Positions 469-51,874 of a stretch of 64,000 bases of DNA are shown here, one piece after another (position 1 is the stretch's first letter; every line of letters starts with the position of its first letter). A program made the position numbers and the translations under genes. Under the pieces are notes generated by a model, which did no database searches, had not been told where the DNA came from, and was given only the letters and a program-made list of their open reading frames with translations. This stretch comes from Magallana gigas (Eukaryota): NCBI RefSeq assembly GCF_963853765.1, contig NC_088859.1:47740001-47804000 (forward strand). Direction: 5' to 3'.

Positions 469-1126
469 ACTAAATGTGTCTCAGATATGTGAACTTAACA
501 AATTTGTGTCTTCTACACCTATCTGTGTGATTCTACGATCGATAACTCACTTCACTAATTGCGGAACTGTGAACTAAGTGTATATATTTTTGTTTACACT
601 ATGTTGCATTACGTTATTCTCATAGTCATGCTATATTTAGCATTGTACTGGTCAGTAGGAACCGTCCAGTACACTTTTTGTTTTCTCCTTTCTGAGGAGC
701 AATCAATCACTCCAGTCTTTTGTACATTTATTTTTGGTGTTATTGATTTTTCATTACACCATCTGTTTTATATAACTCATATTTTTTTCATTTTTTTTCA
801 TATTTACTACAGTCTAACGCAATACGTTTATGCGTTATTTAACTACCTTTGTATATTGTTATTTACCTTTTGTTTTGTCATTGTGCACATACATTTTTTA
901 TGCTATTACTTTCACCCCTACGTTTTGTTTATCTCTTTTGTTGAACAATATTTTGTCAATTGTCATATTGAGGTATCGTCATTTTCATTTGAATACCTTC
1001 ATTCAGCTGTAAGTTTACTACTAGTGGTGTATCTTCCGGTTTTTGGTCTTATTCATTACCCATATACGACACATTATACAGATTGCAGCCATCATTTCCC
1101 CCCTATTGTTATCAAACAGTTAATCA

Positions 1127-4100
1127 TTGACAATGGGTAATTCATTAGAACAATACCGTGCTGCAATCGGTAACTTCTATTTTTCATGCAGATGTGTATG
1201 CAGAAGTGTTCTGGTCAATTTTTTTGGTTTCTCATTTTTTTCTAAGATCTTTATGTTTCGAAGTATTTGTCTTTTTGCATTAGCTATGAAACACTTAAGC
1301 CGTCACATTGTCGTTTATAATTTCTATCTACAATTTTTCATGTTTCTTTTACTTCTCTGCGGTGATATTGAAGTCAACCCGGGACCTATTATGACCAATG
1401 TCCTTGACATTTTACATTTGAACATTCGCAGTATTAGAAACAAAGTCGCGAATCTTAATACTATAGTGCATGATTTTGATATACTTTGTTTTACCGAAAC
1501 ACATCTAGATCGTAATGTTACTAACGAAAGCTTAATGTTAGATGGATTTAACACTATTTATCGCAAGGACAGAAATTGTTTTGGGGGAGGGATAATGATA
1601 TATTTATCAGATTTATTACGAGCAATAAGGCGTCCTGAATTCGAAACAACATGTAATGAAAGCATATGGATAGAAATTGAAAGCCATACCTGTAGTTATT
1701 TTCTATGTTGCGTGTATCGACCCCCAAATTCCGACGGAAATTTTTGGACCAGTCTTTCTTGGAGCATTGAAAAGGTCGGGGAAATCACAGACAATATCAT
1801 TATAATAGGCGATCTAAATGTTGATTTGTTAAGTATTCCACAAACTCATGTAATTCACGATATTATGTCCAACGGAAACTTTGTTAACAATATCAATGAA
1901 CCCACTCGTGTCACAAACACTTCGAGCACACTCATTGACCTAGTTTTGTCAACACCGGCTGTAAAGGTACACGAGTCCGGCGTACTTAACATAGACTCGT
2001 CCGTTAGCGACCACAAGGCTATTTATATTTCCTTCTCCATCGACATTGAACTGAATCGTGCATACGAGCGTAATATTTGGGTATATAAAGATGCAGATTT
2101 TGAAAAATTAAACTCTCTAATTTCCAACTGCGATTGGGATATTACAATTAACAGCGCTCCAAATATTGATGCGGCAGTTGCACAGTTTACTTCAACATTT
2201 ATGGCATATGTTAGTGAATGTGTACCCGAAAAAACTATAACCATACGCCCCCGCGATAAACCGTGGTACGACTCGATGCTTCGTAAAACTATGAGAATTA
2301 GGGACCGCTTACGAAACAAAGCTTTAAGAACCAATAATGATGCCGACTGGACAAAATTCCGACACGTTCGCAATAAAGTAAATAATATGAAAAAACACGC
2401 TATAACTAATTATTATGATAATATTGAATCTGCATTGCATGATAGTAGTAGGAATGGTAAAATATATTGGAAGTTGATGAAAGATTTATTCAAAGTTAAA
2501 GCAACAACTGAAATACCCCCATTGCAATTCTTTGAAAATGGACAACCTACATTAGCCTTTTCAGATATTGAAAAAACAGAAACTTTGAACAAATATTTTT
2601 CATCAATTTCAAATATTGAATCTGCGAATCGTTCATTACCAAATTTATACTATATGTGTAATAATTTTTTTTCAGATATTCACATAGAGGTTCAAGAAGT
2701 TTTTGACATTATATCAATCTTGCCCGTTAATAAGGCTATTGGCCCTGATAATATTAGTCATAGAATGTTGAAATATACAAAATTTTCCATTTCAAAACCT
2801 TTATGTATGCTTTTTAACAAATCACTTGTTGAAAATTCATTTCCAAATTATTGGAAAATAGCTCATGTTCTACCGCTCTTTAAGAAAGATGATCCATCTG
2901 TTACAAGTAACTACAGACCGGTATCCCTGCTAAGCTGTGTCAGCAAAATTATGGAAAGGATAATTTTTAAGCACGTTTATAATTTCTTTCACGAAAATAA
3001 TTTATTCTATAAATACCAGGCAGGTTTTTTGCCTGGCCATTCCACGGTATTCCAACTATTAGAAACATATCATAGCATTGTCAAAAGTATAGAAGATGGG
3101 AAAATGTGTTGCATGATTTTTTGTGATTTGTCTAAAGCTTTTGACAGGGTGTGGCACGAAGCCCTAATTTTTAAACTTCAAACTTATGGTATAAGTGGGC
3201 ATCTTTTACAATGGTTTAAAAGTTACTTAAGTGATAGAACACAAAGGGTAATGTACAAAAACAAGTTATCATCAACGTTATGTATCAATGCTGGTGTTCC
3301 ACAAGGGTCAGTATTAGGACCACTTTTATTTCTTATTTACATTAATGATGTAGCAACGAATATGTTATCATTTTGTAGACTTTATGCTGATGATAATTCA
3401 TTACAGCATTGTGATTTATATACTAAAAACATTGAAATTGTATTGAACCATGATCTGAAAATTCTCAGCGATTGGTCTGACAAGTGGTTATTGAAATTTA
3501 ATCCGTCTAAAACAAAAGCTGTTTTTTTCACTAAGAAACATGTAGAAGAATTTCCTAAGTTATTTTTTCAAGGGTGTCAACTGGACTATGTTTCAACCCA
3601 CAGACATCTTGGTTTACTTTTTTCTAATGATTTAAGTTGGTCTCAATATATTAATAATATAGTAAACAGTGCATACAAAAAATTAGGACTTTTGAAAAAA
3701 CTTAAGTTTACTCTAGGTAGAACTAATTTATCAAAAATGTATATCACGTTTATTAGACCAGTTCTTGAATATGCTTCTGTAGTATGGGACGGTTGCAATA
3801 TGTTTGACATGGAGAGATTAGAAAAAGTTCAATTAAGTGCTGCAAGGATTGTTACTGGTTTACCCATTTTAGCATCTACAGATTCTCTCTACACAGAAAC
3901 TGGCTGGGAATCTCTGGTCAGTCGACGAAATAAGGCTAAATTAATAACCATGTTTAAAATTCATACAAATCAAGTACCTGAGTACTTGAGCAATATTATT
4001 CCTCCCGTAACAAAAAATGTCTCAAAATATCACACAAGAAATAGCGAAAATTATAGTGTTCCAATCAGCAGATTAGAACTTTACAAAAAATCTTTTGTAC

Positions 4101-4546
4101 CTGACACCATTCGGAAATGGAATTCTCTCAAATTAGAAGTTAGGGAAGCAACGTCTCTCAACATATTCAAGAAAAACATTACTGAAAGTATTCCTCAACC
4201 TCCAAAATATTTTTCATTTGGTAAACGCACTATTAATATTTTACATACCAAGTTGAGACACAACTGTATTTTGAATTATGATCTGTATAGAAGAAACATT
4301 ATTGAATCATCCAATTGTATTTGTGGTCAAAAGGAGGATATTTATCACTTTTTCTTTGTATGCAAGAATTATGTAAATGCAAGAAACAATCTTTTTGAAT
4401 TACTTTTTAATAGGCTTGATGAAACAATTTTAATTAACTCACATTTGCTTCTTTGGGGTAGTGACAATTTGTCTTACAATACAAACTGCTTTATTTTTTC
4501 AGCAGTTCAAAAGTTCATTAATGAGTCTGGAAGATTTAATAATTAA
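1127..4546 (+). CDS. LINE ORF2: 2A peptide + apurinic endonuclease + reverse transcriptase
   Basis: APE motifs HLNIRS, FTETHL, GDLN, TLIDL, SDH. RT motifs KAIGPD, YRPVSLL, DLSKAFDRV, GVPQGSVLGP, YADD. C-terminal CICG..ED..HFFFVC. 1139 aa without stops. Confidence 0.97.
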   Translation: MTMGNSLEQYRAAIGNFYFSCRCVCRSVLVNFFGFSFFSKIFMFRSICLFALAMKHLSRHIVVYNFYLQFFMFLLLLCGDIEVNPGPIMTNVLDILHLNIRSIRNKVANLNTIVHDFDILCFTETHLDRNVTNESLMLDGFNTIYRKDRNCFGGGIMIYLSDLLRAIRRPEFETTCNESIWIEIESHTCSYFLCCVYRPPNSDGNFWTSLSWSIEKVGEITDNIIIIGDLNVDLLSIPQTHVIHDIMSNGNFVNNINEPTRVTNTSSTLIDLVLSTPAVKVHESGVLNIDSSVSDHKAIYISFSIDIELNRAYERNIWVYKDADFEKLNSLISNCDWDITINSAPNIDAAVAQFTSTFMAYVSECVPEKTITIRPRDKPWYDSMLRKTMRIRDRLRNKALRTNNDADWTKFRHVRNKVNNMKKHAITNYYDNIESALHDSSRNGKIYWKLMKDLFKVKATTEIPPLQFFENGQPTLAFSDIEKTETLNKYFSSISNIESANRSLPNLYYMCNNFFSDIHIEVQEVFDIISILPVNKAIGPDNISHRMLKYTKFSISKPLCMLFNKSLVENSFPNYWKIAHVLPLFKKDDPSVTSNYRPVSLLSCVSKIMERIIFKHVYNFFHENNLFYKYQAGFLPGHSTVFQLLETYHSIVKSIEDGKMCCMIFCDLSKAFDRVWHEALIFKLQTYGISGHLLQWFKSYLSDRTQRVMYKNKLSSTLCINAGVPQGSVLGPLLFLIYINDVATNMLSFCRLYADDNSLQHCDLYTKNIEIVLNHDLKILSDWSDKWLLKFNPSKTKAVFFTKKHVEEFPKLFFQGCQLDYVSTHRHLGLLFSNDLSWSQYINNIVNSAYKKLGLLKKLKFTLGRTNLSKMYITFIRPVLEYASVVWDGCNMFDMERLEKVQLSAARIVTGLPILASTDSLYTETGWESLVSRRNKAKLITMFKIHTNQVPEYLSNIIPPVTKNVSKYHTRNSENYSVPISRLELYKKSFVPDTIRKWNSLKLEVREATSLNIFKKNITESIPQPPKYFSFGKRTINILHTKLRHNCILNYDLYRRNIIESSNCICGQKEDIYHFFFVCKNYVNARNNLFELLFNRLDETILINSHLLLWGSDNLSYNTNCFIFSAVQKFINESGRFNN
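1343..1387 (+). other. 2A-like ribosomal skipping (StopGo) sequence LLLLCGDIEVNPG/P
   Basis: Exact D(V/I)ExNPGP match with a hydrophobic upstream helix, just before the APE domain. Confidence 0.85.
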
Positions 4547-7297: not shown

Positions 7298-7443
7298 CCG
7301 GTTTCATGATCAAAATTCCACGTTGCGGGTCAATTTTCAACGGATTGGGGTCTTTATTCAACAACTTTGGTCTCAATATTCAACGTGGAAAAATGAACCC
7401 CGGGTCAATTTTCAACCCGGGTCAAAATTCTTCGTTACACCGG
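7298..7443. mobile_element. Short MITE with GGGTCAATTTTCAAC internal repeats and CCGGT(G)T termini
   Basis: Starts CCGGTTTC, ends TTACACCGG. Internal repeats of GGTCAA(A/T)TTTTCAAC(G). Confidence 0.55.
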
Positions 7444-7453
7444 TCAGAATAGA

Positions 7454-7533
7454 CATTTCCGCTAGCCAAGGGTTTACAATCCACTCTGCTCCTCTGGACA
7501 GATTGGATTGTAAACCAGTCGCTAGCGAAGATG
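7454..7533. mobile_element. 80-bp fold-back MITE (CATCTTCGCTAGC family) with 9-bp TSD
   Basis: Termini CATTTCCGCTAGC...GCTAGCGAAGATG. Flanks CAGAATAGA (7445-7453) and CAGAAAAGA (7534-7542). Same termini as the element at 16942-22826. Confidence 0.8.
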
Positions 7534-7600
7534 CAGAAAAGATTGCGCACATAGTCTTTGTTTTTGATTTAATGACGCTACTGACGCTCCATAATCAGGA

Positions 7601-7614
7601 GTGAAACGAAAGTA
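7601..7614 (+). promoter_or_regulatory. IRF/ISRE-like motif upstream of the Ro60-like start
   Basis: GTGAAACGAAAGT, about 62 bp before ATG 7676; two GAAA cores with 1-nt spacing. Motif match only. Confidence 0.3.
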
Positions 7615-7675
7615 CTAGTACCCAAACTGAACGAAGTCGTAAACCTGACAATCTAACCTGACTGCAAATGTTAAC

Positions 7676-7800
7676 ATGGAAGGTCTGTCTAATATAGATG
7701 CATGGAAGTACTGTCTTAGAAAGTATTTATGTTTGGGGACATTTGAAGGATTGCTGATCTCAAATAACACCAGCATTGACCTGGAAAAATGTATCGACAG
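7676..7800 (+). CDS. RO60: Ro60-like gene, coding exon 1 (missed by the ORF track)
   Basis: MEGLSNIDAWKYCLRKYLCLGTFEG...DLEKCID aligns with the Ro60 N-terminus (RLHRFLCFGSEGG). Ends AG|GTGAG; 125 nt (phase 2) matches exon 2. Confidence 0.82.
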
Positions 7801-8578
7801 GTGAGAATTACGTACCTTAACCTACAGTAGGCTACAGGAAGTCAATGTCCATTTAATTAAATGTACTCATTAATTCATAAGTTATTTATATAAATATAGA
7901 GATTAGTTAAACAAACTTCAATTCCTTCCCTTTTGCTGATTTAAATTTTAAAAAAAACCAATCGGATCCATGTCAATATTTTGAACAATGTTCGACAACT
8001 CTCTTCAAAATACCGGTGGTCTAAAAATTGAGTAGTTCATCAAACTAAATTGCATTCTCATTCTCGATTTTTTTTTTTGGTTATTTGTTGGGTGTGATCA
8101 AATATGATCATTTTTAAAAATTGTCTCTCTAATATTTTATTTATTAAAAAAATTCTGGCGGTTGACAAAAGAGTCAAGTTACAAGTGAGATATGCGCGGC
8201 AAAAATATAGATGTCAGATTCCGAAGACTCGTGCCATTAATTTTGTTTGTTAATACATGTGTAAATACTTTGAGAAAAGCTTCATTTATACATTTTTAGT
8301 GATAGCTATTGTATCAAGAACATGATGCATGCTTTGTGAATGCTACAGCCGCATTAACGTGGTAATTATTGTTGATCAATGAACAACTCAGCTGTTGGAT
8401 TCTGAAATATATATTTCGATGTACATACAGAATTTTGTGGTCTGTAACAACAACTATTTCAGAAGTGAATATAATAAAATCCACACACATACAGCTATGA
8501 TTCTCGCATTAAATGTTTTAAGATATTTGAATAAAACTAGTTTCGGAATTTAGCGCCAATCATGCGCGCTTAAGTGAC

Positions 8579-8671
8579 TGTTATTTTGTAAGTAATGATG
8601 TGTGAGGGGTTCTACCAGTTATAGTCTATAACTGGTAGAACCCCTCACACATCATTACTTACAAAATAACA
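8579..8671. repeat. Perfect 93-bp palindrome (46-bp arms, 1-nt spacer) in the Ro60-like intron
   Basis: TGTTATTTTG...GTTATAG-T-CTATAAC...CAAAATAACA; arms are exact reverse complements. Confidence 0.95.
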
Positions 8672-9087
8672 ACCAATCATATAACTCTCGCATGACCCAA
8701 AAACCTTTGATCTTTTTGACAATGAGTGTCAAACGTTGTCAATTCCAGTGATCTGTAATTCCCTATGTCTTATAGATGATGATGAGACTGGTGATGATTT
8801 ATGAATTAGTACATTAAATTGCAATATATATTATTATTATAAATATTCTATGAATAATTCACCCTGTGACATTTTATATTTTTTGAAGTTTTGTGACTTC
8901 TGACATTGAAAAATGGCCAAGCAAGCAATAAAAATATTAGTTAACCATTCTTAAAATTAAAGATCTAAAGATAGATTTTCACAATTCTAAGCTATAATTT
9001 TGTCCATACCTCAGTAAACAGTAAACAAAGTAATCTCAACTTTATCAAAAAGGGTTGAAATGCATATCTGAAGTTTTCATTTTTCAG

Positions 9088-10609
9088 CCTGATAGTTGAA
9101 AAGCGTGGCTGCGAAGTTGTAGAGATCCTCCAAAAGTTTCGCAGGGAGAACCGCACCCCGAAACGTGACGCCATCTTATTTGCCCTGGCAACTTGTTGCA
9201 GATGCTGCCACCTTAAAACTAAGAAAAAGGCGTACAAGGCTCTACCCGACATCTGTCAAAACCCCGCCGATCTTTTCCAGTTCCTTAGCTTCTACAGATC
9301 TCTAGGTGTGGGGAGTGGATGGGGACGGGCACACCGCCGGGCTGTCGCAGAATGGTACCTCGGCTACGAGAAGCAAGATGGCCAGAAAAAAGAGGAAGAC
9401 GAAATGAAAAAGATGGTGTACCACTTTTTTAAATATAAGTCACGTCATGGATGGAGTCACAAGGATGTTTTTCGTCTTTGTCATTTCAAAAAAGAAAATC
9501 TGGATAAAAAAGTGATGGTGAAGTATATGGTTTTGGTCTTTACAAGTCCCAAAAATGGCCGTGCTCGTGGTAAGGAGTGGTTAAATGAAGTGAAAGAGTC
9601 AACTCCGGTAGAAAATCACAGGAAGTTTGATGAATTGAAAAATTTAGTTGAAGAGTACAGTAAAGCACAAAAAAGCAAATCAATGACTGTTATAATTGAT
9701 TTGATTGATAAATACGACATACCAAGAGAGGTGGTTCCTAGTGAAATGCTGAACTACAAGAACGTCTGGAAGGCTCTTCTGCGCCAAATGCCTTTCACTG
9801 CGCTCATCAGGAATCTCGGAAAAATGTCAAACCTTGGTGTTTTTGAGAGAGGAAGTTTCGAGGAGAACTTAACCATTCAAAAATTAACAAACCCTGAAAG
9901 CATTCAGAATTCTAAAGTGCACCCATTTACTTTGTTGGTGGCGTTAACTCAATACAGGAAAGGTCGAGGTGAGCTTGGATCCTTGATTTGGGCTGTGAAC
10001 CCGTATATAAGCCAGGCCCTAGAAGATGCCTTTTATTTGTCCTTTGAGTCCGTCAGTACTGTAGAAGAGAAAAGTTACCTGATCGCCGTTGACCTCAATG
10101 GTGCAATGAATGCTCCAGTGATAGGATCGCCAACGATATCGGCACTTGATGCGGCTGCTGCTCTCGCCATGGCAACCGTCAGGTGTGGTGACCAGTGTAG
10201 CGTGGTGGCGTTCTCTAGTAAGGAGGGGACTCCTCTACAGGGCGTGGATGTGGGGGAGACGGACTCCCTACCGGACGTGCTCGAGAAGTTCGCCGTAATC
10301 AGTCCAGGGAAAGTAGATTGTTCACGTCTACTAAAGGAAGCCACGGAAGCCAAAAATGGCGGAAGTAGTGTTCTGCCCGAAACATCGTTTGATGTTTTTA
10401 TCGTTTACACAGGTTTTAAGACTGATTTTTCCAAGGACGCTGCTGATTTGTTACATGAGTATGACAAAAGTTCTCGCTTCGTTCTGTGTAGTTTGAGTAA
10501 TAGTTTGTTTCAAACGTCATTAAATCCGAAATTGCTTGAAATCGCTGGCTTTGATTCCCATACACCAAACATTATTAACGAATTTGTACGAGGGAGTTTT
10601 GAATGTTAA
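9088..10609 (+). CDS. RO60: Ro60-like gene, coding exon 2 (TROVE + vWA domains); spliced protein 548 aa
   Basis: Acceptor TTTTCAG| at 9087. LIVEKRGCEVVE, WGRAHRRAVAEWY, KYKSRHGWSHKDVFRLCH, REVVP, MPFTALIRNLGKMS, VHPF, YRKGRG, LEDAFY are Ro60 signatures. Divergent paralog likely. Confidence 0.93.
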
Positions 10610-12349
10610 CAAGCATAAAACACTGAACGAATATGAACATTATTTTGAATATAATGAACTTATTACTTTCACTTCATTGTTGTTATAGAAACTATGTATA
10701 TAGTGTATAAATCTGATTAAAATTAGCTGCCCCGATACGCTTTCGCTCTCAGAACAGATTATTTTCACCAGATTTAATAGTGTCTGATTTGTATATATAT
10801 CTTTGAATGTTCACATGTACATGTATCAAAAACTTGCGACATACACTGTAGCCTATATACTTGAAAATTGATGGCATTACTCTGAGTGCGAATGTTGTTT
10901 TGAAACGCTATCAATTTAATTACTAGTAATGCAATATATCATACACGTTTTATAATTATATCAGCAGATTTACTGGATGCGAGTTGAAATATTACTGATT
11001 AATAAAATGGACAAATCAACTTTTATTAATTTGATCAATAAAGTTAAATTGTAAAACAAAACCCAACATTCGAACAATGTAATAAGATATTGGCCTTTGC
11101 ATGTCTTCGATAAGGTAATTGTTTAAGGTATAATTGTAGCAACATCTTTTAACCTTTTGTTAAATCTTGGATTCAATTTCTTATTTAGTTCAATTGTTCA
11201 TTGCAGATGTATTAGTTTAGTTTATTTGTGTCATTTTGTTTGACTCGGTGATTTTTATTTTCATCGGAAAGTTGTTTGCATTCTGAGCATTGTACACTGT
11301 CTAATGACATCTTGCCCAGAGACATGAGAATAATATAAATTTATAAAATAAAATTTAAAAAAAATGCAGGAAGTTGAACGGAAAAAAGCGCAGAACAAAC
11401 TCAAGTCTGTATCTTCAAATTAAATGCAGGAAAGACAATGATGAGTTTGACTCCGAGTCCGTTTCGGACGATACAAATGATGAGTTAAAATCTTTGTCGT
11501 AAATGTATGCATTTGTCTTGAAAATGGCGGAAAAAATTGTTCTATTTTGGGGGAAAATCAACTTTTAAAAATGTATTGCTTTTCATAAAAACAAAAGTCC
11601 CCGTTATATTCGAACTCTTGACCTGCGGTTTAGTAGTCCGAAGTTTTACCCACTTCGCTACAGAAATAGACACCGAACTTTGCTGGCATAAACAGTTTCA
11701 CAACGAGTCGAAATCGCCATATTGTGACGTAATGTCATAAAAAGTAAAAGTGACGGGGTGTCGAGGATAATTAACATCTGGACTCATCTGAACAGGAAGG
11801 TCAAAAAACAAGTTGTCTAAATCAAAAAAATCTCAGGCGCTCGTATGCAAGGCTGATGTGCCAAAGCTTCAACGATTAGATTCACTCAACTTTATCGGCG
11901 ATTCTCACCTTTATATCACTTCACCTCTCTATCTCAAAATCATAAAACATAAAATTTGTAAATAAAGAAGTATATCGATCATTTTCTAAATATATTTACT
12001 TTTGATAATGACAATAACGTGTATACTGTAGATACAAAAGCAATCATAATGTTGTATTTTACGTGGTTGCGAATTATTAAATGCTTGTGAATAGACAACA
12101 TAAAATACGTTAGGAGAACAGTATTTTTAATAAGCACATATTCAACAGAATTAATCTAAATTGTAGTGAATCATGTGTATAAAGTATTAAAACAATGCAA
12201 TGAAAAAATAGCCAGTACCTCTCCTATTCACAATTCCCATAACTCGCTATTTCATCTTTTTCCTTAAAACTCTATACAATTTACATTTTTAAACAATGCA
12301 TGTTTCAGCATTTATGAGGCTACTCATAGATTTTCTCAACAATGAAAAA

Positions 12350-17879: not shown

Positions 17880-20435
17880 TTGATGCCCAAAACTGATGCC
17901 TTTGACTACAATACCCTAAAGACAGCATTACTCAGACGCTTTGAATTGACAGATGACGGTTTTAAAAAGAAATTTCAATCATGTAGGCCAGATCCTAGTG
18001 AAACATTTTCCCAGTTCGCTGTTCGGTTGAGTAGTTATCTTGATAGGTGGATTGAAATGGCAAAGGTTTCCAAATCATTTGAAGACTTGTATGATCTTAT
18101 GTTACGCGATCAATTTTTACATGTGTGTAGTCAAGATTTGAAACTATTTTTAAAGGAAAGATTACCTGAGAATTTGACAAGAATGGCAAACTTGGCTGAT
18201 CAGTATAAAGATGCTCGTGACCTGAATGCACTCCAAGCTACGGGTAAGGGTAAGATGCCTTTAGCAAGAAAAGTTGATCAGGTGAAGAAAACAGATGTAG
18301 GTGAGAACAAGCATGTACCTAATGATAAGAAAAGGTTCATTCCAAAGACAGAGCGTAAGTGTTACAAATGTCATAGGTACGGACACATTGCACCAGAATG
18401 TAAGTCTAGAACATCGTTTAATAACGTTTCTAATGCAGTGCAAGACGTTGGATCCTCAGAGCAAAAGGTTTGTTTTGTTAGCACAATGCCTACTGATTCT
18501 ATTGTAGATTCCAGAGTCTCTTCTTCTCTAATGACAATGTCATCATCTTGTCAGAAGAACTCGTCTTTTAACATGCCTTTATCTGCAGGGTATGTTAACA
18601 ATGTTCCTGTGACGGTACTAAGAGATACTGGGTGTAGTGGTATTGTTGTTAAAATGAGCAAGATACAGGAGGAAAACCTTATAGTTGGTAAGAAACAGAC
18701 TTGTATTTTAGCAGATGGATCTAAGGTATCTGTCCCGATTGCCGATGTGTCAATCGATACGCCATTTCTGAAAGGTCAGTATGAGGTATGGTGTATGGAG
18801 AATCCATATCCTCAACTTAGGGTTCCAGACATGATTACTGAAGATATCAATCCGATGACAATTAGGGATGCGCAGGAGCATGATCATTCTTTGAAAAAAG
18901 TACGTGAAAATGTAGAGAACAATCTCTCTCAGGTTAAGAAAAATGGTAAAGTGAGTTGGTTTAAGAAAAACGACCTTATGTTTAGACAGTATAGTACTCA
19001 TGTGGGAGATAGGGAAAAGACTTATTCTCAATTAGTTGTTCCCGATAAATTCCGAAACCAGGTGATGAAACTTGCACATGATTCATTGCTAGCAGGTCAT
19101 TTAGGAACACAGCGTACTTTAGCGAGAGTAACGTCAGAATTCTGGTGGCCAGGAATCCAGAGTGATGTGCGAAGATTTTGCCAGTCTTGTGACATTTGTC
19201 AGCGCACAGTTCACAAAGGTAAGATTAAGAAAGTACCTCTTGAACGAATGCCACTCATAGACGAACCGTTTCAGAGAGTTGCTGTTGACCTGGTGGGCCC
19301 TCTTTCTCCAATCACAGACAAAGGTAATCGCTACATTCTCACTTTAGTGGATTATGCTACTCGCTATCCTGAAGCCATCGCACTTCCCAGCATCGAAACA
19401 GAGAGAATTGCAGAGGCTCTATTTGAAATGTTCTCGAGAATTGGTATACCTCGTGAAATGTTGACAGATATGGGAGCTCAGTTTACTTCCGCATTAATGT
19501 CAGAGGTAAGTCGCCTTATTTCTCTTAGTCAGCGGACAACAACCCCGTATCATCCTAGCTGTAATGGGTTGGTGGAACGATTCAACGGGACCTTAAAGCA
19601 GATGTTGAAGCGACTCTGTTCCGAGAAACCAAAAGATTGGGACAAGTACCTAAGTGCTGTGCTGTTTGCCTACCGAGAAGTGCCACAGGAGAGTCTTGGA
19701 TTCTCACCCTTTGAGTTGGTATATGGTAGATCAGTTCGTGGACCTATTTCCATATTGAAGGAGTTGTGGACAAACGACACACCAGATCCCAACGTCAAGA
19801 CAACCTACCAATATGTCTTAGATCTCAAGGACAGACTCCAGTCTATGGCTGAACTTGCGAAAGAGAGTCTGGAAAAGTCGTCTACCAGATACAAGAAACA
19901 CTATGACAGGAAAACTAGAACTAGAAGTCTAAAGGTAGGAGATAAAGCTCTTGTTCTTTTACCGACTGACAATAACAAATTATTGCTTCAGTGGAAAGGA
20001 CCTTTTGTAGTCACAAAGAAAGTCAACAGAGTTGATTATCAGTTAGATATGCAAGGTAAGACAAAGACCTTTCATATAAATCTTTTGAAAAAGTACATTG
20101 AGAGACCAATTTCAGATGTTGCGTCAGTGACGGAAGATACAGGTGTTCTTGGTTTAGTGAACGCAGCAGTAGTTGATTGCGTAGATGATGAGGACCAAGA
20201 TGGACATTTAGATGAGTACCCTCAATCACAGGTTAGTGTAAGCACAGTAAACATTAACCCATCATTGTCATTAGAGAGCAAGGACAGATTGATGAAGTTG
20301 CTTTTTAAGTTTGATGATGTTTTTCAAGACAGTCCTGGTATCACAAGTGTACTTGAACATGAAATTAGAACGGCAAGTGCCAAACCGATTCATGTCAAAA
20401 TCGTCAGATACTATATTCAATGGAGGAAACAGTAA
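17880..20435 (+). CDS. Gypsy B polyprotein part: gag (CCHC knuckle), protease, integrase, start of RT
   Basis: CYKCHRYGHIAPEC; LRDTGCSG; HDSLLAGHLG..CQSCDIC; DLVGP / TDMG / VERFN (DDE); WKGPF. The frame extends upstream to WAINLSALLKGKAL at 17826. Confidence 0.9.
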   Translation: MMPKTDAFDYNTLKTALLRRFELTDDGFKKKFQSCRPDPSETFSQFAVRLSSYLDRWIEMAKVSKSFEDLYDLMLRDQFLHVCSQDLKLFLKERLPENLTRMANLADQYKDARDLNALQATGKGKMPLARKVDQVKKTDVGENKHVPNDKKRFIPKTERKCYKCHRYGHIAPECKSRTSFNNVSNAVQDVGSSEQKVCFVSTMPTDSIVDSRVSSSLMTMSSSCQKNSSFNMPLSAGYVNNVPVTVLRDTGCSGIVVKMSKIQEENLIVGKKQTCILADGSKVSVPIADVSIDTPFLKGQYEVWCMENPYPQLRVPDMITEDINPMTIRDAQEHDHSLKKVRENVENNLSQVKKNGKVSWFKKNDLMFRQYSTHVGDREKTYSQLVVPDKFRNQVMKLAHDSLLAGHLGTQRTLARVTSEFWWPGIQSDVRRFCQSCDICQRTVHKGKIKKVPLERMPLIDEPFQRVAVDLVGPLSPITDKGNRYILTLVDYATRYPEAIALPSIETERIAEALFEMFSRIGIPREMLTDMGAQFTSALMSEVSRLISLSQRTTTPYHPSCNGLVERFNGTLKQMLKRLCSEKPKDWDKYLSAVLFAYREVPQESLGFSPFELVYGRSVRGPISILKELWTNDTPDPNVKTTYQYVLDLKDRLQSMAELAKESLEKSSTRYKKHYDRKTRTRSLKVGDKALVLLPTDNNKLLLQWKGPFVVTKKVNRVDYQLDMQGKTKTFHINLLKKYIERPISDVASVTEDTGVLGLVNAAVVDCVDDEDQDGHLDEYPQSQVSVSTVNINPSLSLESKDRLMKLLFKFDDVFQDSPGITSVLEHEIRTASAKPIHVKIVRYYIQWRKQ

Positions 20436-21354
20436 ACAAAGAGGTGGGTGACATGTTGAAGATTAACATTATTGAATCTTCTGACTCCCCGTATTGTTCA
20501 CCAGTAGTTATCGTGCCCAAGAAAGATGGAACAAACAGGTTCTGTATAGATTTTCGCCTGTTAAATAATCAGACCATATTTGATTCAGAGCCAATGCCAT
20601 ATGCTGATGAAATGTTTTCCAAACTTGCAGGACATAAATTCTTTTCAAAAATTGATCTATCAAAAGGGTACTGGCAGGTTAAGTTAACAGATGATTCAAA
20701 ACCAAAAACAGCCTTTAGAACAGGTAAGGGTTTGTTTCAGTTCAGGGTCATGCCCTTTGGGTTAGTTACGGCTCCGGCCACATTTTCAAGATTAATGCAG
20801 AAAGTCTTGCATGGAATGGAGAATTTGTGCAAAATTTTGCTCAAATCGCGTCACCATTGACTGACTTGACCAAAAAAGGTTTACCCACTAAGTTGAAATG
20901 GGAAGATGCTCACAATTTAGCATTTCAGACGTTAAAAGCTTCACTTACTAAGTGTCCCATATTGAAACTTCCTGATATTAAGGAGACTTTCATTCTACAG
21001 ACGGACGCTTCAGACAGAGGTCTAGGTGCAGTTCTTTTACAAGAAGAACTTGGTCAGAAACTCCCCATTGCTTATGCTAGTAGAAAGCTAAGAGAGAGTG
21101 AGTGCAAGTGTGCAACTGTTGAGAAAGAGTGCTTGGCAGTTGTATGGGCAATTCAGAAATTCCAGAAGTATTTGTATGGACATGAGTTCATTTTAGAGAC
21201 AGATCATAGCCCACTTGTGTACTTAAATAAGGCTAAGGTCACTAACCCTAGACTTATGCGCTGGGCGCTTAGTTTGCAACCTTACAGGTTTACTATACAT
21301 GCAATTAAAGGTAAAGACAATGTGGGTGCAGACTACCTAAGTCGTTTGATGTAA
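20420..21354 (+). pseudogene. Gypsy B RT (YxDD region deleted) and RNase H
   Basis: KIDLSKGYWQV and FRVMPFGL, then a jump at about 20828 directly to NFAQIASPLTDL with no DD motif. RNase H: LQTDAS, KECLAVVW, ETDH, ADYLSR. Confidence 0.88.
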
Positions 21355-34205: not shown

Positions 34206-34997
34206 CTATGATACCACTAATTATACCACCATCCGATAAATCAGAAGGTCTTGCGGCCATCTCAAAGTTTTTTAGTTTTACAAAATAGCCGTCATCTGAC
34301 ACTGTACAACCGTAGGAAGCCGTGGTGATATCTCTGAGCAGACATTCTTGTCTGTGGACGTATATAACAGCCTTCACCGCCTGTATTATTATCCTGATCA
34401 GATCAACGATTGGAATTATCTTTCTTTTTTCTCTTGCCTCCAGGAGGCGCCTCTGTAAGTTGTCTCCAGGAAGTCTCTCTTTGATGTAAAATTTTGGAAG
34501 CGACTGACTAAAGGCTAGGAGCCTTGTCACATTTGATTGAAAGTGTTTGGATTCTATCTCTTTCAAAACCTCAAGCTCATTTTCTAAGTTTTCTTTTATA
34601 TATTTGGTTTTAATATCTGAAAGGTTTGCCGCTGAGGTGTTATCATGCATATTAACATCCTTTGATTCAAACTGGAATGTTTCGTAAAAGCAAGTAATCG
34701 ATGCGTTTACATCGCAAATTGTACATTGTTTGCGTTTTAATGTGCTTTTTGATTGCAAATTTGTTAGGTCTAAAAAAAGACCACATTTCTCTAGAAGACC
34801 TTGTAAATGAGTGTCCGTTACCGACACTGTACCATATACACCTTTTTTCCTCGCTATGGCTCTGTATCTGGTCCGAATACTTTCGTTGTGGTGGAAAAAT
34901 AGGCTATGTGAAAAAGCGAGCCCCTCGGAGTGAAAAGTGTCACTCTTAAATATAGAAAACAACTCGTCTTCACATCGGTAATGTACATCTTGTTTCA
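34206..34997 (-). CDS. Exon: end of the N-terminal region + kinase 1 subdomains I-VII
   Basis: ELEVLKEI, NVTRLLAF, PGDNL, YVHRQECLLRDITTAS, VKLKNFEMA; TATTACAG| and |GTAAGA; phase 1-1. Confidence 0.92.
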
Positions 34998-35355
34998 CTG
35001 TAATAAAATGGTTAAGTTATAAATCCCGGGTACTAACTCTCTCTCTCTNNNNNNNNNNNNNNNNNNNNNNNNNNNNNNNNNNNNNNNNNNNNNNNNNNNN
35101 NNNNNNNNNNNNNNNNNNNNNNNNNNNNNNNNNNNNNNNNNNNNNNNNNNNNNNNNNNNNNNNNNNNNNNNNNNNNCCAAATTAAATAAATTTATTTAAT
35201 TTGGACTGTCACATTCTGTNNNNNNNNNNNNNNNNNNNNNNNNNNNNNNNNNNNNNNNNNNNNNNNNNNNNNNNNNNNNNNNNNNNNNNNNNNNNNNNNN
35301 NNNNNNNNNNNNNNNNNNNNNNNNNNNNNNNNNNNNNNNNNNNNNNNNNNNNNNN

Positions 35356-38300
35356 ACACTAGGCATCTTTTAAGTGTCGGATCTCATATATAGATACTAA
35401 GCCAGTAAACTGAAAATATAAAGCACTAAAAATGACTAACGACACAAACAATAGAAATTGTCAAATTTTCGGGACAACCAGTCCCTTCTTCAGGACCACA
35501 AAATAAATTACATGAGTACAAAACAAAGAAAACAAAATCTAAAGCTACTACTTAACTACTTAAAAATCTATAAAAAAAGAACAGCTACATTATAAACATT
35601 TGTTCACATTCTTAAAGAAGGTGTTGCTACTTTCACCGATCGCTATAAAGTAACCAATCGACTGCCAACTTCACGTCTGATTAAGTTAATTAGCTAATTA
35701 AAATTGGAGTCCGAGTTAATAAATGAAAATTTGAACCCCCGTTGTTAACTCGTACGGCACTTATGATATAGACTCGAATTTTTGATTAAAAAGAGATAAA
35801 ATTAAAGGAAAATAAATAAATAAAATTAAGAAAAAAATGATTTACAAATAAAAGGTAGTAAAGAAACTAATAAATGAATGGAAGAGGCGCAGTTGACAGA
35901 TTTTATGAAATTACTATGTGGGTGTCAGGTGATGTATGGCTATGAGACGTTCATTTTAGTGAAGTCCATTTGTTTGTTCATGCCATCAGGTCTGAATGAT
36001 TTGAGCCTGTGCATCCAGAACTTTTCCTTGCTCTTCCTCTCCGCGTCTGTCCAATGAGGATTATGGTCAATAACCAATACTGTCATGTCTTCCCATTTGT
36101 GGCCACTTGTATTGAAATGTTCTCCGACGGGCTCCTTGACTTTTTTGGTCTTTATGGTAGAGCGATGGTTGTTGATCCTTCTGCGGAGGTCATCTGTTTC
36201 ACCAACGTATTGCTTAGAGCAGACTTTGCAACTGATGAGATAGATGCAGTTGTCTGTGCGGCAAGAAGTGTTGCCAAATATCTTGTAGGTGCGACCCGTG
36301 ATGGGGCTTTTAAAACTGTCCGCGTTGGTGCTGTGTTTGCACAACGGGCATCTGGTATCGGAACATGTTTTAAAACCACCATTTGGCAACGGGTTGTCCA
36401 ATCTTGCCCTCACTACCATGTCCTTTAAGTTCCTCGGGCGTTTAAACGCAGCCATTGGTGGATCCTTGAAAAGACCAGCCATTCTTTCGTTAGTGTAAAG
36501 AATGGGCAGATTATTTCTAAGGATGCTGTTGAGGTTCTTAAGGGCGGGGTGATATGTAGTGACAAGTAGAACTGTTTTTTCTTTGTATTGTAAAAGGGTT
36601 TTCCTGTCATTTGTAGTAATCTCATCAATTGCAGATTGAACTGTGTGGGCTTTATAGCCTCGATTACACAGATGGGATTTTAATATTCTGCTCTGTTCTT
36701 CAAAGATTTCATTAGAAGAACTGATTCGGGTTGTTAATCCTTTAGGAATTCCTCTAAAAGTATGGGGAGGGTGGCAACTCGATGGCTTGAGGTAGAGGTG
36801 AGAATCAGTGGGTTTGGTATGGAGACTGAATTTTATTCCACCATCTTCCAAGATGGATGTAGTATCCAAAAATACATTTTTGGAACTAGATTAGTCCACT
36901 GTGAATTAAATCGAATTGTGGAAGGAGTTGGCAAAGGTGATGAAGTCATTTAGGCAGTCTCGGTTTTCGACCCATTTCATCTCAATATCATCAATGAACC
37001 GCAACCAGCTCAAAGGTTTGAAAGGAGCTCTGAGAAGATGGTTGCGTTCCAATCTTCCCATAAATATATTGGCGTAAGAGGGAGCCATTTTGGTGCCCAT
37101 AGCTGTACCACTTATTTGTATGTAATGTTCGCCATTAAACATGAAATTGTTTAGCTTGAGAACATGTTCAAGGAGCTTAAGTAGAGATTCGGTTGACGGC
37201 TGCTGAATCGTTCTACTGTCCCATACCTCCCTGCAGGCCTCGATACCTTCATCGTGAGGAATATTCGTGTACAAGGACGTGACGTCCATTGTAACGAGAA
37301 GAGTATGGTCTGGCAGGCCAGAGGAAGGTGTCTTATTCAGGTAATCTGTAGTGTCCTTGAGGTATGATGGCACATCTTCTACGTGTGGACGGAGATGTAA
37401 ATCTATCAATTCAGATATTTTCTCCGTGGGGTGGCCGATGGCACTGACTATAGGGCGCCCAGGCATTCCTTCCTTGTAGATTTTTGGAAGCAGATAAAAT
37501 TCACTCGGTCTACAGTTGGTTGGGCGAAGCGTTTCATAAACATTAACACAAATCTCATCATTTTCATACATTTTGTCCAGGGTGTTAGTGATGAGAGCTG
37601 AAAACTCTTCGGTTGGATCAGAGTCTAGTTTCTTGTAGAAACGATCGTCTGTCAGTTGTCTGTTCGCTTCAGCTAAATACGCTTGGCTTGTTTGTCTAGG
37701 ACAACCCCTGTGGATCCTTTGTCTGCTTTCTTTATGACTATGTCGTCCCTGTTTTTCAACCTTTGTAGAGCAGATCTTTCTTCTTTCGTCAGATTGTCAG
37801 GGACGATTTTTTGGTTGGTCAGGAGCTTCTCAATGTCTGACTCAACGGCATCAATGTAAGACTCAAGTGCTCCACATTTGCCCGGTGCCGGTTCCCAAGT
37901 ACTTTTGGGTCGGTACAACTTATGTTCCTCTAAGTTGTGCAAGGGTGGAGGAGGTTCGTCTGTGTGATCATTGCTGGAGTCTTTTCGCGAGAAGTGTTCC
38001 TTTAATCTTAGCCTTCGGCAAAAATGCTCTGGTGTCCTCTCTAACCTTTTTCTCATCGACCTCATGCGGTGTTGGACAGAAATTGAGACCTTTAGATAGA
38101 AGCGATGTCTCAACGTCTGTGAGAGGAACCTTAGATGTATTCAGAACTGGGCAGGTGTTGGTATCGGCCAAGGACTCGTCTTCACTTGTTTGCTTCTTGT
38201 GCTTGAAGCGTCTAGAGTGCCGTTTTTTTAGCAGAAGGACGAGATGACAACATATTAGACCTAGTTCTGATTGTTGCTGGAACACCGTCTCGAAGGAACT

Positions 38301-50766: not shown

Positions 50767-51873
50767 ATGGCTGCCACGTCAGGTGGTCGCCATTTTGGCG
50801 GATCAAAGAATTTGTTTGCCGGCAGAAAATACTGTCGAGAAAACACTCTATTCGTAAATGTCAAGGACAATTCCTTTGTCAAAGCTGAGAAAATCATCAC
50901 ATTTATTCACGAGACCTGTGGAATTGGTAGTTTATTAGCATGTGTACCGAAATCTGGGAATCTGTACGAAATAACATTAGACGGAAAAGCCCCCATACAG
51001 TACCTCCTTGAAGGGATAAAAATAGGTGACAACACTTTCGAGTGTAATGAAGTTGTACCAAGCTCGTTAGTGGTTAGTTTTATGCACCTCCCTGCATACA
51101 TCGATGACAATGAAATCGAAGCAACGTTAAAATCAATGGGTGTTGAACTATTGTCACCAATCAACAGAAGGTTTTATCCAGGTACTACGATAGCCGACGG
51201 CACACGATATGCAAAAGTCAGACTACCAGAACATATGACCTCGTTTCCTTACACATTAAAGTTTCAAAAAGATTACTATCGATGTATTCACAACGGACAA
51301 TTAAAAGTGTGTTCGCTGTGTTATTCTAGTGAACACCTTTTTAGGGCATGTCCAGAATTCCGATGCTTTAAGTGCAAAGAACAAGGACACTATGCAAGGG
51401 CATGTAAATCTACCAGATGTAAACAGTGTGAGGAATGGGAACACAGATGTTCGTGCAGGGTGAGTGAACACGGAGACGAAGGCGAAATCGATGAATGGGA
51501 CCATGAGGTGAATAACGAGGATGACATGGATGTACACAGTGTCGGTGACGAGGAGGCACCAGAAGGGGACCAGGAAACCGGTGATCAAGAGATCGGTGAC
51601 CAAGAAAAATCGCACACAGAAGAACAAAATATAGAAGAAAAAGACGCGGAGGAGACCGAAACTAGTGATCAAAACGGAAAAAGTGATAATGATAAAACGA
51701 ACGAAACAAAATCCGAGAAAATACCACCTGATGTTATAGATTCCGAAATACGCGAAAGTGAAAAAGAATCATCAACCGTGGAATCAGACCTCGACACGGA
51801 AGTTACCGTTAAAAACACAAAGAAGAGAAAAGGTAAAGAGAAAAACAAAGGAAAAGCAAAGAAGAACAAATAA
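50767..51873 (+). CDS. Tx1 ORF1 (gag-like, CCHC zinc knuckles, acidic and Lys-rich tail)
   Basis: CSLCYSSEHLFRAC and CFKCKEQGHYARAC; ADGTR motif; same layout as Tx1/L1 ORF1. Confidence 0.93.
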   Translation: MAATSGGRHFGGSKNLFAGRKYCRENTLFVNVKDNSFVKAEKIITFIHETCGIGSLLACVPKSGNLYEITLDGKAPIQYLLEGIKIGDNTFECNEVVPSSLVVSFMHLPAYIDDNEIEATLKSMGVELLSPINRRFYPGTTIADGTRYAKVRLPEHMTSFPYTLKFQKDYYRCIHNGQLKVCSLCYSSEHLFRACPEFRCFKCKEQGHYARACKSTRCKQCEEWEHRCSCRVSEHGDEGEIDEWDHEVNNEDDMDVHSVGDEEAPEGDQETGDQEIGDQEKSHTEEQNIEEKDAEETETSDQNGKSDNDKTNETKSEKIPPDVIDSEIRESEKESSTVESDLDTEVTVKNTKKRKGKEKNKGKAKKNK

Positions 51874-51874
51874 A

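What the first reader, a model, noticed from the sequence alone, without database searches (positions are those of the whole stretch)
7676..10609. Divergent Ro60 paralog: Y-RNA-binding helix kept, MIDAS site almost completely lost
Seen: KYKSRHGWSHKDVFRLCH keeps the residues equivalent to vertebrate K170/R174/D181/R184/H187 (numbering from recall). The vWA MIDAS DxSxS...T...D reads DLNGA (10091-10105)...V (10313)...G (10412), so four of five ligands are replaced while the frame is intact. The N-terminus is shortened and degenerate, and there is a charged insertion (EKQDGQKKEEDE). Established: the Ro60 MIDAS binds a divalent cation. Inference: a metal-independent Ro60 with altered partners or RNA clients, possibly an immune RNA-surveillance paralog. 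I do not recall this state being described.
Basis: partly seen in the sequence, partly recalled or inferred. Interest (0 to 1): 0.75.

Follow-up and report, generated by a model that had tools for sequence, protein, structure and literature searches.

The report
Oyster Ro60 paralog lacking metal site
The Pacific oyster keeps and expresses an extra copy of the RNA quality-control protein Ro60 whose RNA-binding ring is intact but whose otherwise highly conserved metal-binding site and N-terminal clasp are gone, so it is a natural test of what that site is for.

Summary
Window 7676-7800 plus 9088-10609 (+) is a two-exon, 548-aa gene, 100% identical to Magallana gigas XP_011439001.3 "RNA-binding protein Ro60". 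The five MIDAS ligands read D-N-A-V-G. In 101 of 127 Ro60 homologs surveyed they read D-S-S-T-D. The Y-RNA and cavity residues (K170, R174, D181, R184, H187 equivalents) are kept. The N-terminal two-strand hairpin is deleted.

It is not the oyster's only Ro60. A canonical copy with an intact MIDAS lies about 168 kb away, and five more two-exon paralogs exist; three of those five are also MIDAS-degenerate.

The window gene has a syntenic Crassostrea virginica ortholog (D-N-S-V-S) and sits on a long stem branch. Its dN/dS is about 0.2 in both domains. It is spliced and found in poly(A) RNA. Its AlphaFold model is confident (pLDDT 91) and superposes on human Ro60.

So this is a maintained paralog, present in Crassostrea and Magallana. 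It most likely still binds RNA on the ring, but it has lost MIDAS-dependent coupling.

TROVE-family expansion in bivalves is published. MIDAS loss was mentioned in none of the papers I searched. The scan had not noted this before.

The parts
7676..7800 (+). Exon 1 coding part (residues 1-41 plus two bases of codon 42). Short, degenerate N-terminus that lacks the two-strand hairpin of canonical Ro60.
   Evidence: ATG at 7676 and donor AG|gtgaga at 7800/7801. Spliced joint seen in RNA. Alignment shows the hairpin motif is missing.
7801..9087 (+). Single intron (1287 nt, GT..AG).
   Evidence: Joint 7797->9085 (cut +3) in contigs of two RNA studies and in poly(A) raw reads; intron depth is 0 in the raw-read runs.
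9088..10609 (+). Exon 2 coding part (residues 42-548 plus stop): TROVE HEAT-repeat ring and Ro60-type vWA domain.
   Evidence: Acceptor ttttcag|C at 9087/9088. 100% identical to XP_011439001.3. Pfam TROVE 1.7e-29 and vWA_Ro60 4.9e-24.
9368..9403 (+). Acidic/charged insertion EKQDGQKKEEDE (residues 136-147) in the loop preceding the Y-RNA-binding helix. It is longer and also acidic in the C. virginica ortholog.
   Evidence: Model pLDDT is 74-78 here.
9431..9484 (+). Y-RNA-binding / cavity helix-hairpin KYKSRHGWSHKDVFRLCH. Equivalents of K170, R174, W177, H179, D181, R184, L185 and H187 are all kept; N175 is H.
9809..9823 (+). Invariant RNLGK loop of the ring (R283-K287 equivalents), retained.
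10076..10588 (+). Ro60-type vWA domain (residues 372-542), remodelled. 28 of about 52 positions conserved in canonical Ro60 are replaced.
   Evidence: Pfam PF25045, 85.6 bits. Conservation table. dN/dS 0.17-0.27 within the clade.
10091..10105 (+). Former MIDAS loop 1: D-L-N-G-A instead of D-x-S-x-S.
   Evidence: Same motif in all 28 Magallana cluster members read.
10313..10315 (+). V451 in place of the MIDAS threonine (T445 in human numbering).
10412..10414 (+). G484 in place of the MIDAS aspartate (D469 in human numbering).
10496..10528 (+). SNSLFQTSLNP replaces the conserved F-T-I-A-D-P-x-D edge segment. In the model it is a loop rather than a strand.
   Evidence: Canonical model has strand E540-541 here; the window model has none.

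Best explanation
This is a selectively maintained, transcribed paralog of the oyster Ro60 gene, found in Crassostrea and Magallana. It keeps the HEAT-repeat RNA-binding ring, including the Y-RNA helix, the RNLGK loop and the cavity histidine. Its vWA cap has been rebuilt: the metal-ion site (MIDAS) is destroyed, with hydroxyl/carboxylate ligands replaced by N, A, V and G. The N-terminal two-strand hairpin that clasps the vWA sheet, and the edge strand it probably pairs with, are gone. Shown here: the gene structure, the residue states, orthology and synteny with C. virginica, purifying selection, splicing and poly(A) RNA, and a confident Ro60-like predicted fold. Inferred: the protein still binds structured or misfolded RNA on or through its ring as Ro60 does, but cannot make any contact that needs the MIDAS metal. 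It is therefore either an RNA-binding ring uncoupled from the canonical partner(s), or one whose remodelled and now-conserved vWA face binds something new without metal.
For: Identity and gene model. Family: Pfam TROVE + vWA_Ro60; PDB 1yvp 3e-53. MIDAS reads D-N-A-V-G against D-S-S-T-D in 101/127 homologs, while K-R-D-R-H is kept. Of 127 positions at least 85% conserved in canonical Ro60, 13 of about 73 are changed in the ring and 28 of about 52 in the vWA. A canonical copy and other paralogs exist in the same genome. Clade with C. virginica has 100/100 support and a stem of 1.06 substitutions per site. Collinear upstream genes in both species. dN/dS is 0.18-0.28 overall, and about the same in the ring and the vWA. 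For the canonical copy, dN is 0.10 and omega about 0.06 over a deeper split. The GT..AG joint appears in contigs of two RNA studies and in poly(A) reads, with strand-consistent mates and an empty intron. A spliced 1965-nt transcript contig exists in a second species. AF2 pLDDT is 91.2 and pTM 0.89; TM to human Ro60 9nen is 0.81/0.88. The hairpin strands are present in the canonical oyster model and absent here. In Xenopus Ro60 the N-terminus forms two extra strands with the vWFA domain, and even a phage Ro60 keeps the Ca site (PMC12135203).
Against: No RNA-binding, metal-binding or partner data exist for this protein. N175 (a Y-RNA contact) is H, and an acidic 12-residue loop sits beside the RNA helix, so RNA specificity may have changed. 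No Y RNA gene could be found in the oyster (inconclusive). The role of the MIDAS in any Ro60 is itself unknown (PMC12135203), so 'uncoupling' has no named partner. dN/dS of 0.2 is three to four times that of the canonical copy, so constraint is relaxed.
Confidence: 0.6

Rival explanations
1. Immune RNA-surveillance paralog: a fast-evolving Ro60 copy recruited to sense or sequester viral or retroelement RNA.
For: The lineage is fast-evolving and lineage-specific, with a long stem. The TROVE family is among bivalve-expanded families listed beside immune families (PMC8382680, PMC8059625). MIDAS degeneration recurs in oyster paralogs, which suggests diversification.
Against: No expression data under infection could be obtained. 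No paper in the library links oyster Ro60 to immunity. Pairwise dN/dS shows purifying selection, not positive selection. The neighbours in the window are retroelements, not immune genes.
Confidence: 0.15
2. Competitor or decoy: it binds the same Y-like or misfolded RNAs as canonical Ro60 but cannot engage MIDAS-dependent partners, and so buffers or antagonises the canonical pathway.
For: The RNA-contact residues are retained while the MIDAS and clasp are lost. The canonical copy is present in the same genome.
Against: The vWA remains under the same constraint as the ring, which a mere loss-of-function cap would not require beyond folding. There are no co-expression data.
Confidence: 0.15
3. 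Decaying duplicate on its way to being a pseudogene; the MIDAS loss is simply erosion.
For: dN is higher than in the canonical copy. 44 of 127 conserved positions are changed. The region is TE-rich.
Against: The reading frame is intact in M. gigas, in a second Magallana-like species and in C. virginica, and in all 42 cluster members read. dN/dS is about 0.2. The mRNA is spliced and polyadenylated. The predicted fold is confident.
Confidence: 0.03

Closest known systems
Vertebrate Ro60 (RO60/TROVE2; Xenopus 1YVP/1YVR/2I91, human 9NEN)
   Same: Same two-domain architecture (TROVE HEAT ring + vWA). 30-32% identity, phmmer E 3e-53, predicted fold TM 0.81/0.88 to 9nen. Y-RNA helix residues K170, R174, W177, D181, R184, L185 and H187 are conserved, as are the RNLGK loop, H320-P321, Y331 and W343.
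   Different: MIDAS has 1 of 5 ligands left. The N-terminal hairpin (human ~5-27) is deleted and the FTIADPxD edge motif replaced. There are an acidic 12-aa insertion before the RNA helix and a 14-aa insertion in the vWA. It is a paralog, not the ortholog.
Canonical oyster Ro60 (M. gigas C7:47,917,971-47,919,4xx, minus strand; P0007; orthologs in O. edulis P0005 and Saccostrea P0006)
   Same: Same chromosome (about 168 kb away), same two-exon structure with one large terminal exon, 43% identity.
   Different: The canonical copy has DVSGS/T/D, the N-terminal hairpin (model strands 37-39 and 45-48), short branches and omega about 0.06. The AU test rejects the window clade being sister to it alone (p = 0.0002).
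Other MIDAS-degenerate oyster Ro60 paralogs (M. gigas C7:19.82-19.83 Mb copies and the C5:32.10 Mb copy; Saccostrea P0060, P0102, P0116)
   Same: Fast-evolving oyster paralogs with two or more MIDAS ligands replaced and K-R-x-R-H largely kept.
   Different: The substitution patterns differ (CNSLD, CSPTD, NRS-D, DTDSN, EGSTN) and map as separate events on the tree. The Saccostrea ones keep the N-terminal hairpin motif and the xDPxD motif, so only the window clade shows the double loss.
Bacterial Rsr (Deinococcus 2NVO) and Thermus phage Ro60 (9L5Y)
   Same: Ring plus vWA fold. Foldseek E 5e-25 and 6e-10.
   Different: The phage protein still coordinates Ca2+ with D, S, T and D of its vWFA (PMC12135203); the window protein cannot. 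The phage closes its ring with a C-terminal helix rather than an N-terminal hairpin.
MIDAS-less vWA domains in general (for example von Willebrand factor A1/A3, Ku70/80); recalled from memory, not tested here
   Same: A precedent that a vWA fold can bind partners without a metal site.
   Different: Those families are unrelated to Ro60. In Ro60 the site is otherwise nearly universal.

Membership tests
Ro60 / TROVE-vWA family (homology) | TROVE domain above Pfam gathering score | tested here: met
   PF05731, 103.7 bits against a cut-off of 23 on the 433-aa ORF alone. The own-genome scan matches profile positions 43-350.
Ro60 / TROVE-vWA family (homology) | Ro60-type vWA domain following the ring | tested here: met
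   PF25045, 85.6 bits against a cut-off of 27.7, covering profile positions 2-165 of 165.
Ro60 / TROVE-vWA family (homology) | Closed HEAT-repeat ring capped by vWA (fold) | tested here: met
   The AF2 model has pLDDT 91.2 and pTM 0.89. Foldseek gives TM 0.81/0.88 to 9nen and E 2e-28 to 1yvp. This is a prediction, not an experiment.
Ro60 / TROVE-vWA family (homology) | Conserved RNA-contact residues (K170, R174, W177, D181, R184, L185, H187; R283-K287; H320-P321) | tested here: met
   All are identical in the window protein and its orthologs. N175 is H.
Canonical Ro60 (functional type) | MIDAS D-x-S-x-S...T...D | tested here: not met
   The ligands read D-N-A-V-G. So I file it as a divergent paralog of the family, not as a canonical Ro60.
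Canonical Ro60 (functional type) | N-terminal two-strand hairpin joining the vWA sheet | tested here: not met
   The motif is absent from the alignment. The window model has no N-terminal strands, whereas the canonical oyster model has E37-39 and E45-48. The hairpin's role in Xenopus is stated in PMC12135203.
Canonical Ro60 (functional type) | One-to-one orthology with animal RO60 | tested here: not met
   The tree places the C7:47.918 Mb copy with the O. edulis and Saccostrea canonical proteins. The window gene is on a separate long branch (AU test).
Canonical Ro60 (functional type) | Binds Y RNA and misfolded RNA | not testable with these tools
   No Y RNA was found by Rfam in the window or the genome. 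The genome search scored only 51 of 89,367 candidates and its controls were blank.
TEP1 / vault TROVE proteins | TROVE followed by NACHT and WD40 in a very long protein | tested here: not met
   The protein is 548 aa and has only TROVE and vWA_Ro60. A separate multi-exon TROVE locus with only weak Ro60 similarity lies on C8:3.32 Mb.

The most novel reading that the evidence does not exclude
The window gene would be a natural MIDAS-null, clasp-less Ro60 that has become a metal-independent RNA-binding module with its own RNA clients or partners, for example retroelement or viral RNA. It would be one arm of a repeated, adaptive diversification of Ro60 in oysters. Comparing it with the canonical copy in the same cell would then reveal what the Ro60 MIDAS does, a question that a 2025 paper (PMC12135203) still calls unclear.
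Probability: 0.15. Interest if true: 0.7.

Novelty: new variant of a known kind. Interest (0 to 1): 0.42.

Why it matters
Ro60 is a major human autoantigen and a conserved RNA quality-control ring. Its vWA metal site is conserved from phage to human, yet its role is still described as unclear (PMC12135203). Oysters carry, side by side, a canonical Ro60 and several maintained paralogs in which that site has been dismantled. In this one, the N-terminal clasp is gone too. That gives a natural separation-of-function series for asking what the MIDAS and the clasp contribute to RNA binding, ring opening or partner recruitment. It also adds detail to a bivalve gene-family expansion so far reported only as a count. 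On its own it is an annotated gene with a modest twist, not a new kind of system.

Tried and rejected
- Rfam scan of the whole window at gathering threshold: no RNA family, so no Y RNA beside the gene.
- Rfam Y_RNA over the whole genome: no match. Only 51 of 89,367 candidates were scored and the controls were blank, so this is uninformative.
- Literature searches all found nothing on oyster Ro60. The term sets were Ro60 + oyster; TROVE2 + Crassostrea; Ro ribonucleoprotein + Crassostrea; XP_011439001; Ro60 + Y RNA + mollusc; and 60 kDa SS-A + bivalve terms.
- Stein et al. 2005 (PMC1769319) is not held. The residue roles therefore come from secondary citations and from the alignment to 1yvp.
- The look-up of P0008, to obtain a second canonical CDS, found nothing on record. 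I used O. edulis instead.
- Exon 1 of the paralogs at C7:19.823, C7:19.830 and C5:32.10 was not found within the 1.5-kb flanks held. Their N-termini are therefore unknown.
- AU test of 'all fast oyster paralogs form one clade': p = 0.051, unresolved.
- Pseudogene reading: rejected (see rivals).
- Recent local duplicate of the neighbouring canonical gene: rejected by the AU test, p = 0.0002.
- Earlier notes of this scan: nothing on Ro60, TROVE or this MIDAS.
- The claim of absence from Ostrea and Saccostrea therefore rests on the word search only.
Full report
**What is there.** The window is G000:C7:47,740,001-47,804,000 of a 564-Mb genome. A 433-aa ORF at 9308-10609 sits inside a 516-codon open frame. 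That frame is the terminal exon of a two-exon gene.
- Exon 1 runs from the ATG at 7676 to the donor AG|gtgaga at 7800/7801.
- Exon 2 runs from the acceptor ttttcag|C at 9087/9088 to the stop at 10607-10609.
- The 548-aa product is 100% identical over exon 2 to XP_011439001.3, 'RNA-binding protein Ro60 [Magallana gigas]'. The organism is therefore the Pacific oyster, and the gene is already annotated.
- Pfam gives TROVE (1.7e-29) and vWA_Ro60 (4.9e-24).
- The best solved relatives are Xenopus Ro60 1yvp (3e-53), human Ro60 9nen and Deinococcus Rsr.

**The observation.**
- KYKSRHGWSHKDVFRLCH (9431-9484) carries the equivalents of K170, R174, D181, R184 and H187.
- The MIDAS ligands are D377-L-N379-G-A381 (10091-10105), V451 (10313) and G484 (10412). 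Vertebrate Ro60 has DVSAS, T445 and D469 at those positions.
- I aligned 121 database homologs plus the six other copies of this genome. The five ligands read D-S-S-T-D in 101 of these 127 sequences.
- S378, S380, T445 and D469 are invariant in the 99 canonical database proteins among them.
- The charged insertion (residues 136-147) lies in the loop just before the RNA helix.
- The N-terminus lacks the equivalents of human residues ~5-27, and GSEGGTYY has become GTFEGLLI.

**Not the only Ro60.** Own-genome scans with both Pfam models find seven copies that share the 'one big terminal exon' structure:
- a canonical copy at C7:47.918 Mb on the minus strand, about 168 kb from the window gene, with DVSGS/T/D;
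- four tandem copies at C7:19.81-19.84 Mb, two with the first four ligands intact (DGSGS, DVSGS) and two degenerate (CMNGS, CISDP);
- the window gene;
- a very divergent copy at C5:32.10 Mb (NIRHS).

Multi-exon TROVE or vWA_Ro60 fragments on C8 and C2 are more distant relatives. So four of the seven paralogs have lost the site. Pinctada, Mytilus, unionids, a chiton, Lingula and annelids all have D-S-S-T-D.

**Evolution.**
- A 40-sequence maximum-likelihood tree puts all these oyster copies, except the divergent C5:32.10 Mb copy, in one clade after the split from Pinctada (98/96). The C5 copy falls outside it.
- The canonical M. gigas copy groups with the O. edulis and Saccostrea proteins on short branches.
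- The window gene groups at 100/100 with a 91%-identical protein from a second Magallana-like oyster (P0002) and with C. virginica XP_022319301.2 (60% identity). This clade sits on a stem of 1.06 substitutions per site.
- The C. virginica gene has the same two exons and the same short N-terminus. Its MIDAS reads D-N-S-V-S, so S378N and T445V are shared and old, while the other two losses came later.
- The two upstream genes in C. virginica, a SAC3/GANP gene and a 250-aa gene, are collinear with M. gigas sequence at window -23.2 to -21.7 kb and -11.5 to -7.6 kb. The two Ro60 genes are therefore positional orthologs.
- An AU test rejects the window clade being sister to the neighbouring canonical gene alone (p = 0.0002). 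It is not a recent local duplicate.
- Whether all the fast oyster paralogs form one old lineage is unresolved (p = 0.051).
- Scoring 'two or more ligands replaced' on the tree needs five changes.
- No closer relative appeared from the annotated O. edulis or Saccostrea proteomes in the word search.

**Selection.**
- Pairwise dN/dS is 0.18-0.28 for M. gigas against the second species (dS about 0.2). It is 0.19-0.23 against C. virginica, where dS of about 1.2-1.6 is near saturation.
- The ring (residues 42-362) and the vWA (363-548) give the same values.
- The canonical copy compared with O. edulis, a deeper split, has dN 0.10 and omega about 0.06. The paralog has dN 0.29 against C. virginica.
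- The paralog is therefore under purifying but relaxed constraint. Its rebuilt vWA is now conserved in its new form.
- All 28 Magallana and 14 C. virginica cluster members read carry their species' MIDAS-less motifs.

**Where the changes fall.** Of 127 positions at least 85% conserved in canonical Ro60, 44 differ in this clade.
- In the ring, 13 of about 73 differ. None is among K170, Y171, R174, W177, H179, D181, R184, L185, H187, R283-K287, H320-P321, Y331, G339 or W343.
- In the vWA, 28 of about 52 differ. These include otherwise invariant residues: E407G, T445V, P450L, D469G, E471K, R487D and the A-D-P-x-D segment.
- The Saccostrea MIDAS-degenerate paralogs keep both the N-terminal hairpin motif and the xDPxD segment. 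The combined loss is peculiar to this clade.

**Expression.** I laid reads on 7300-11200 (3,901 letters).
- Contigs from two RNA studies carry the exact 7800|9088 GT..AG joint.
- Three poly(A) raw reads from two runs, sampled at about 1 in 100, also cross it.
- All exon reads have the first mate on the minus strand, as expected for + strand RNA in a stranded library.
- The intron has zero depth in the raw-read runs.
- A 1965-nt Logan contig from a second species carries the complete spliced ORF.
- Many 1.7-2.1 kb contigs in the protein's cluster carry the complete 548-aa ORF.

The gene is therefore transcribed, spliced and polyadenylated. Levels and conditions are not known.

**Structure.**
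- AlphaFold2 with an 86-sequence alignment gives pLDDT 91.2 and pTM 0.89.
- Foldseek returns only Ro60 structures at the top, with TM 0.81/0.88 to human apo Ro60 9nen.
- A parallel model of the canonical oyster protein (pLDDT 90.9) has N-terminal strands at 37-39 and 45-48 and a short strand at the F-T-I-A segment (540-541).
- The window model has neither. It shows a lower-confidence loop where that segment was.
[quoted passage not shown] It also states that the role of the MIDAS in Ro60 'remains unclear', and that a Thermus phage Ro60 still coordinates Ca2+ with D, S, T and D.
- That the hairpin and its presumed pairing edge were lost together is my inference from the two models.

**Mechanism.**
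- Shown: a conserved RNA-contact surface, a destroyed metal site, a lost clasp, an intact predicted fold, purifying selection and an mRNA.
- From general vWA knowledge (recalled, not tested here): the serine and threonine hydroxyls are direct metal ligands. A site reading N/A/V/G should therefore not hold a cation.
- Inferred: the protein still binds RNA on or through the ring but cannot make MIDAS-dependent contacts. Because the vWA is as constrained as the ring, the rebuilt face is probably used, either for ring closure or for a new metal-independent contact, rather than simply decaying.
- Possible tuning of RNA specificity: the acidic loop beside the RNA helix and the N175H change. This is speculation.
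- The decoy and immune readings remain open. The pseudogene reading is essentially excluded.

**What is known.**
- Two comparative papers list the TROVE orthogroup among families enriched in bivalves: PMC8382680 (OG498, mean 9.2 genes in bivalves against 1.9) and PMC8059625 (OG0000280).
- None of the papers I searched mentions oyster Ro60 paralogs, their MIDAS state or their N-termini.
- A docking and QCM study proposes that the human Ro60 MIDAS region affects Ro52 binding (PMC11231564).

I therefore rate this as a new variant of a known kind. It is a real and tidy natural separation-of-function allele series in an already annotated gene family, of moderate interest.

Noticed in passing
G000:C7:19,816,000-19,838,400 (loci L002, L003, L005, L006): Four tandem Ro60 paralogs on the minus strand. 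Two have the DxSxS loop and final D intact (DGSGS, DVSGS) and two have the first aspartate replaced by cysteine (CMNGS, CISDP). All four have W177F. The copy that equals P0010 (645 aa) carries an internal partial duplication of the vWA alpha1-beta2 segment.
   Followed up: partly
G000:C5:32,099,900-32,101,300 (L007): Very divergent Ro60 paralog with an end branch of 2.49 substitutions per site. Its MIDAS reads NIRHS, D181 and R184 are both K, and it has an acidic C-terminal tail. It groups with two unnamed ENA proteins (P0082, P0097) that have SGDQD.
   Followed up: partly
G000:C7:47,916,800-47,919,500 (L001/L011): Canonical Ro60 copy. A UniRef model (A0A8W8MJR2, 1424 aa, 'PARP12') fuses it with a PARP gene, which suggests a PARP neighbour. 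A small extra vWA_Ro60 fragment (29 bits) lies about 1 kb downstream.
   Followed up: no
window 7300-7500: Very high RNA contig and read depth (300-800) with many loose ends on both strands, just upstream of the Ro60 paralog's start. It behaves like a dispersed, transcribed repeat rather than part of the gene.
   Followed up: no
window 559-4546, 17880-21354, 35940-37571 (minus strand), 50767-55774, 62240-63142: The window is dominated by retroelements: two LINE-type ORF2s (endonuclease + RT), a Gypsy-like integrase/RNase H, a Penelope-like GIY-YIG + RT, and a zf-RVT fragment. In M. gigas the spacer between the Ro60 paralog and its upstream neighbour is about 15 kb, against about 1.6 kb in C. 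virginica. The LINE at 1127-4546 lies within it.
   Followed up: partly
window 34195-34998 (minus strand): A 266-aa ORF with a weak, sub-threshold protein-kinase match (E 3e-5). It may be an exon of a kinase gene or a fragment.
   Followed up: no
window 8388-8861: One RNA run (X12) has low-depth contigs (5-13) inside the intron, one of them with a 51-nt skip. This could be unspliced pre-mRNA, DNA carry-over or an intronic repeat.
   Followed up: no
G000:C2:18,028,352-18,032,148 and G000:C8:3,324,373-3,327,542: Multi-exon loci with vWA_Ro60-like (C2) and TROVE-like (C8) exons that are only distantly similar to Ro60. They may be TEP1/vault-type or another TROVE gene.
   Followed up: partly
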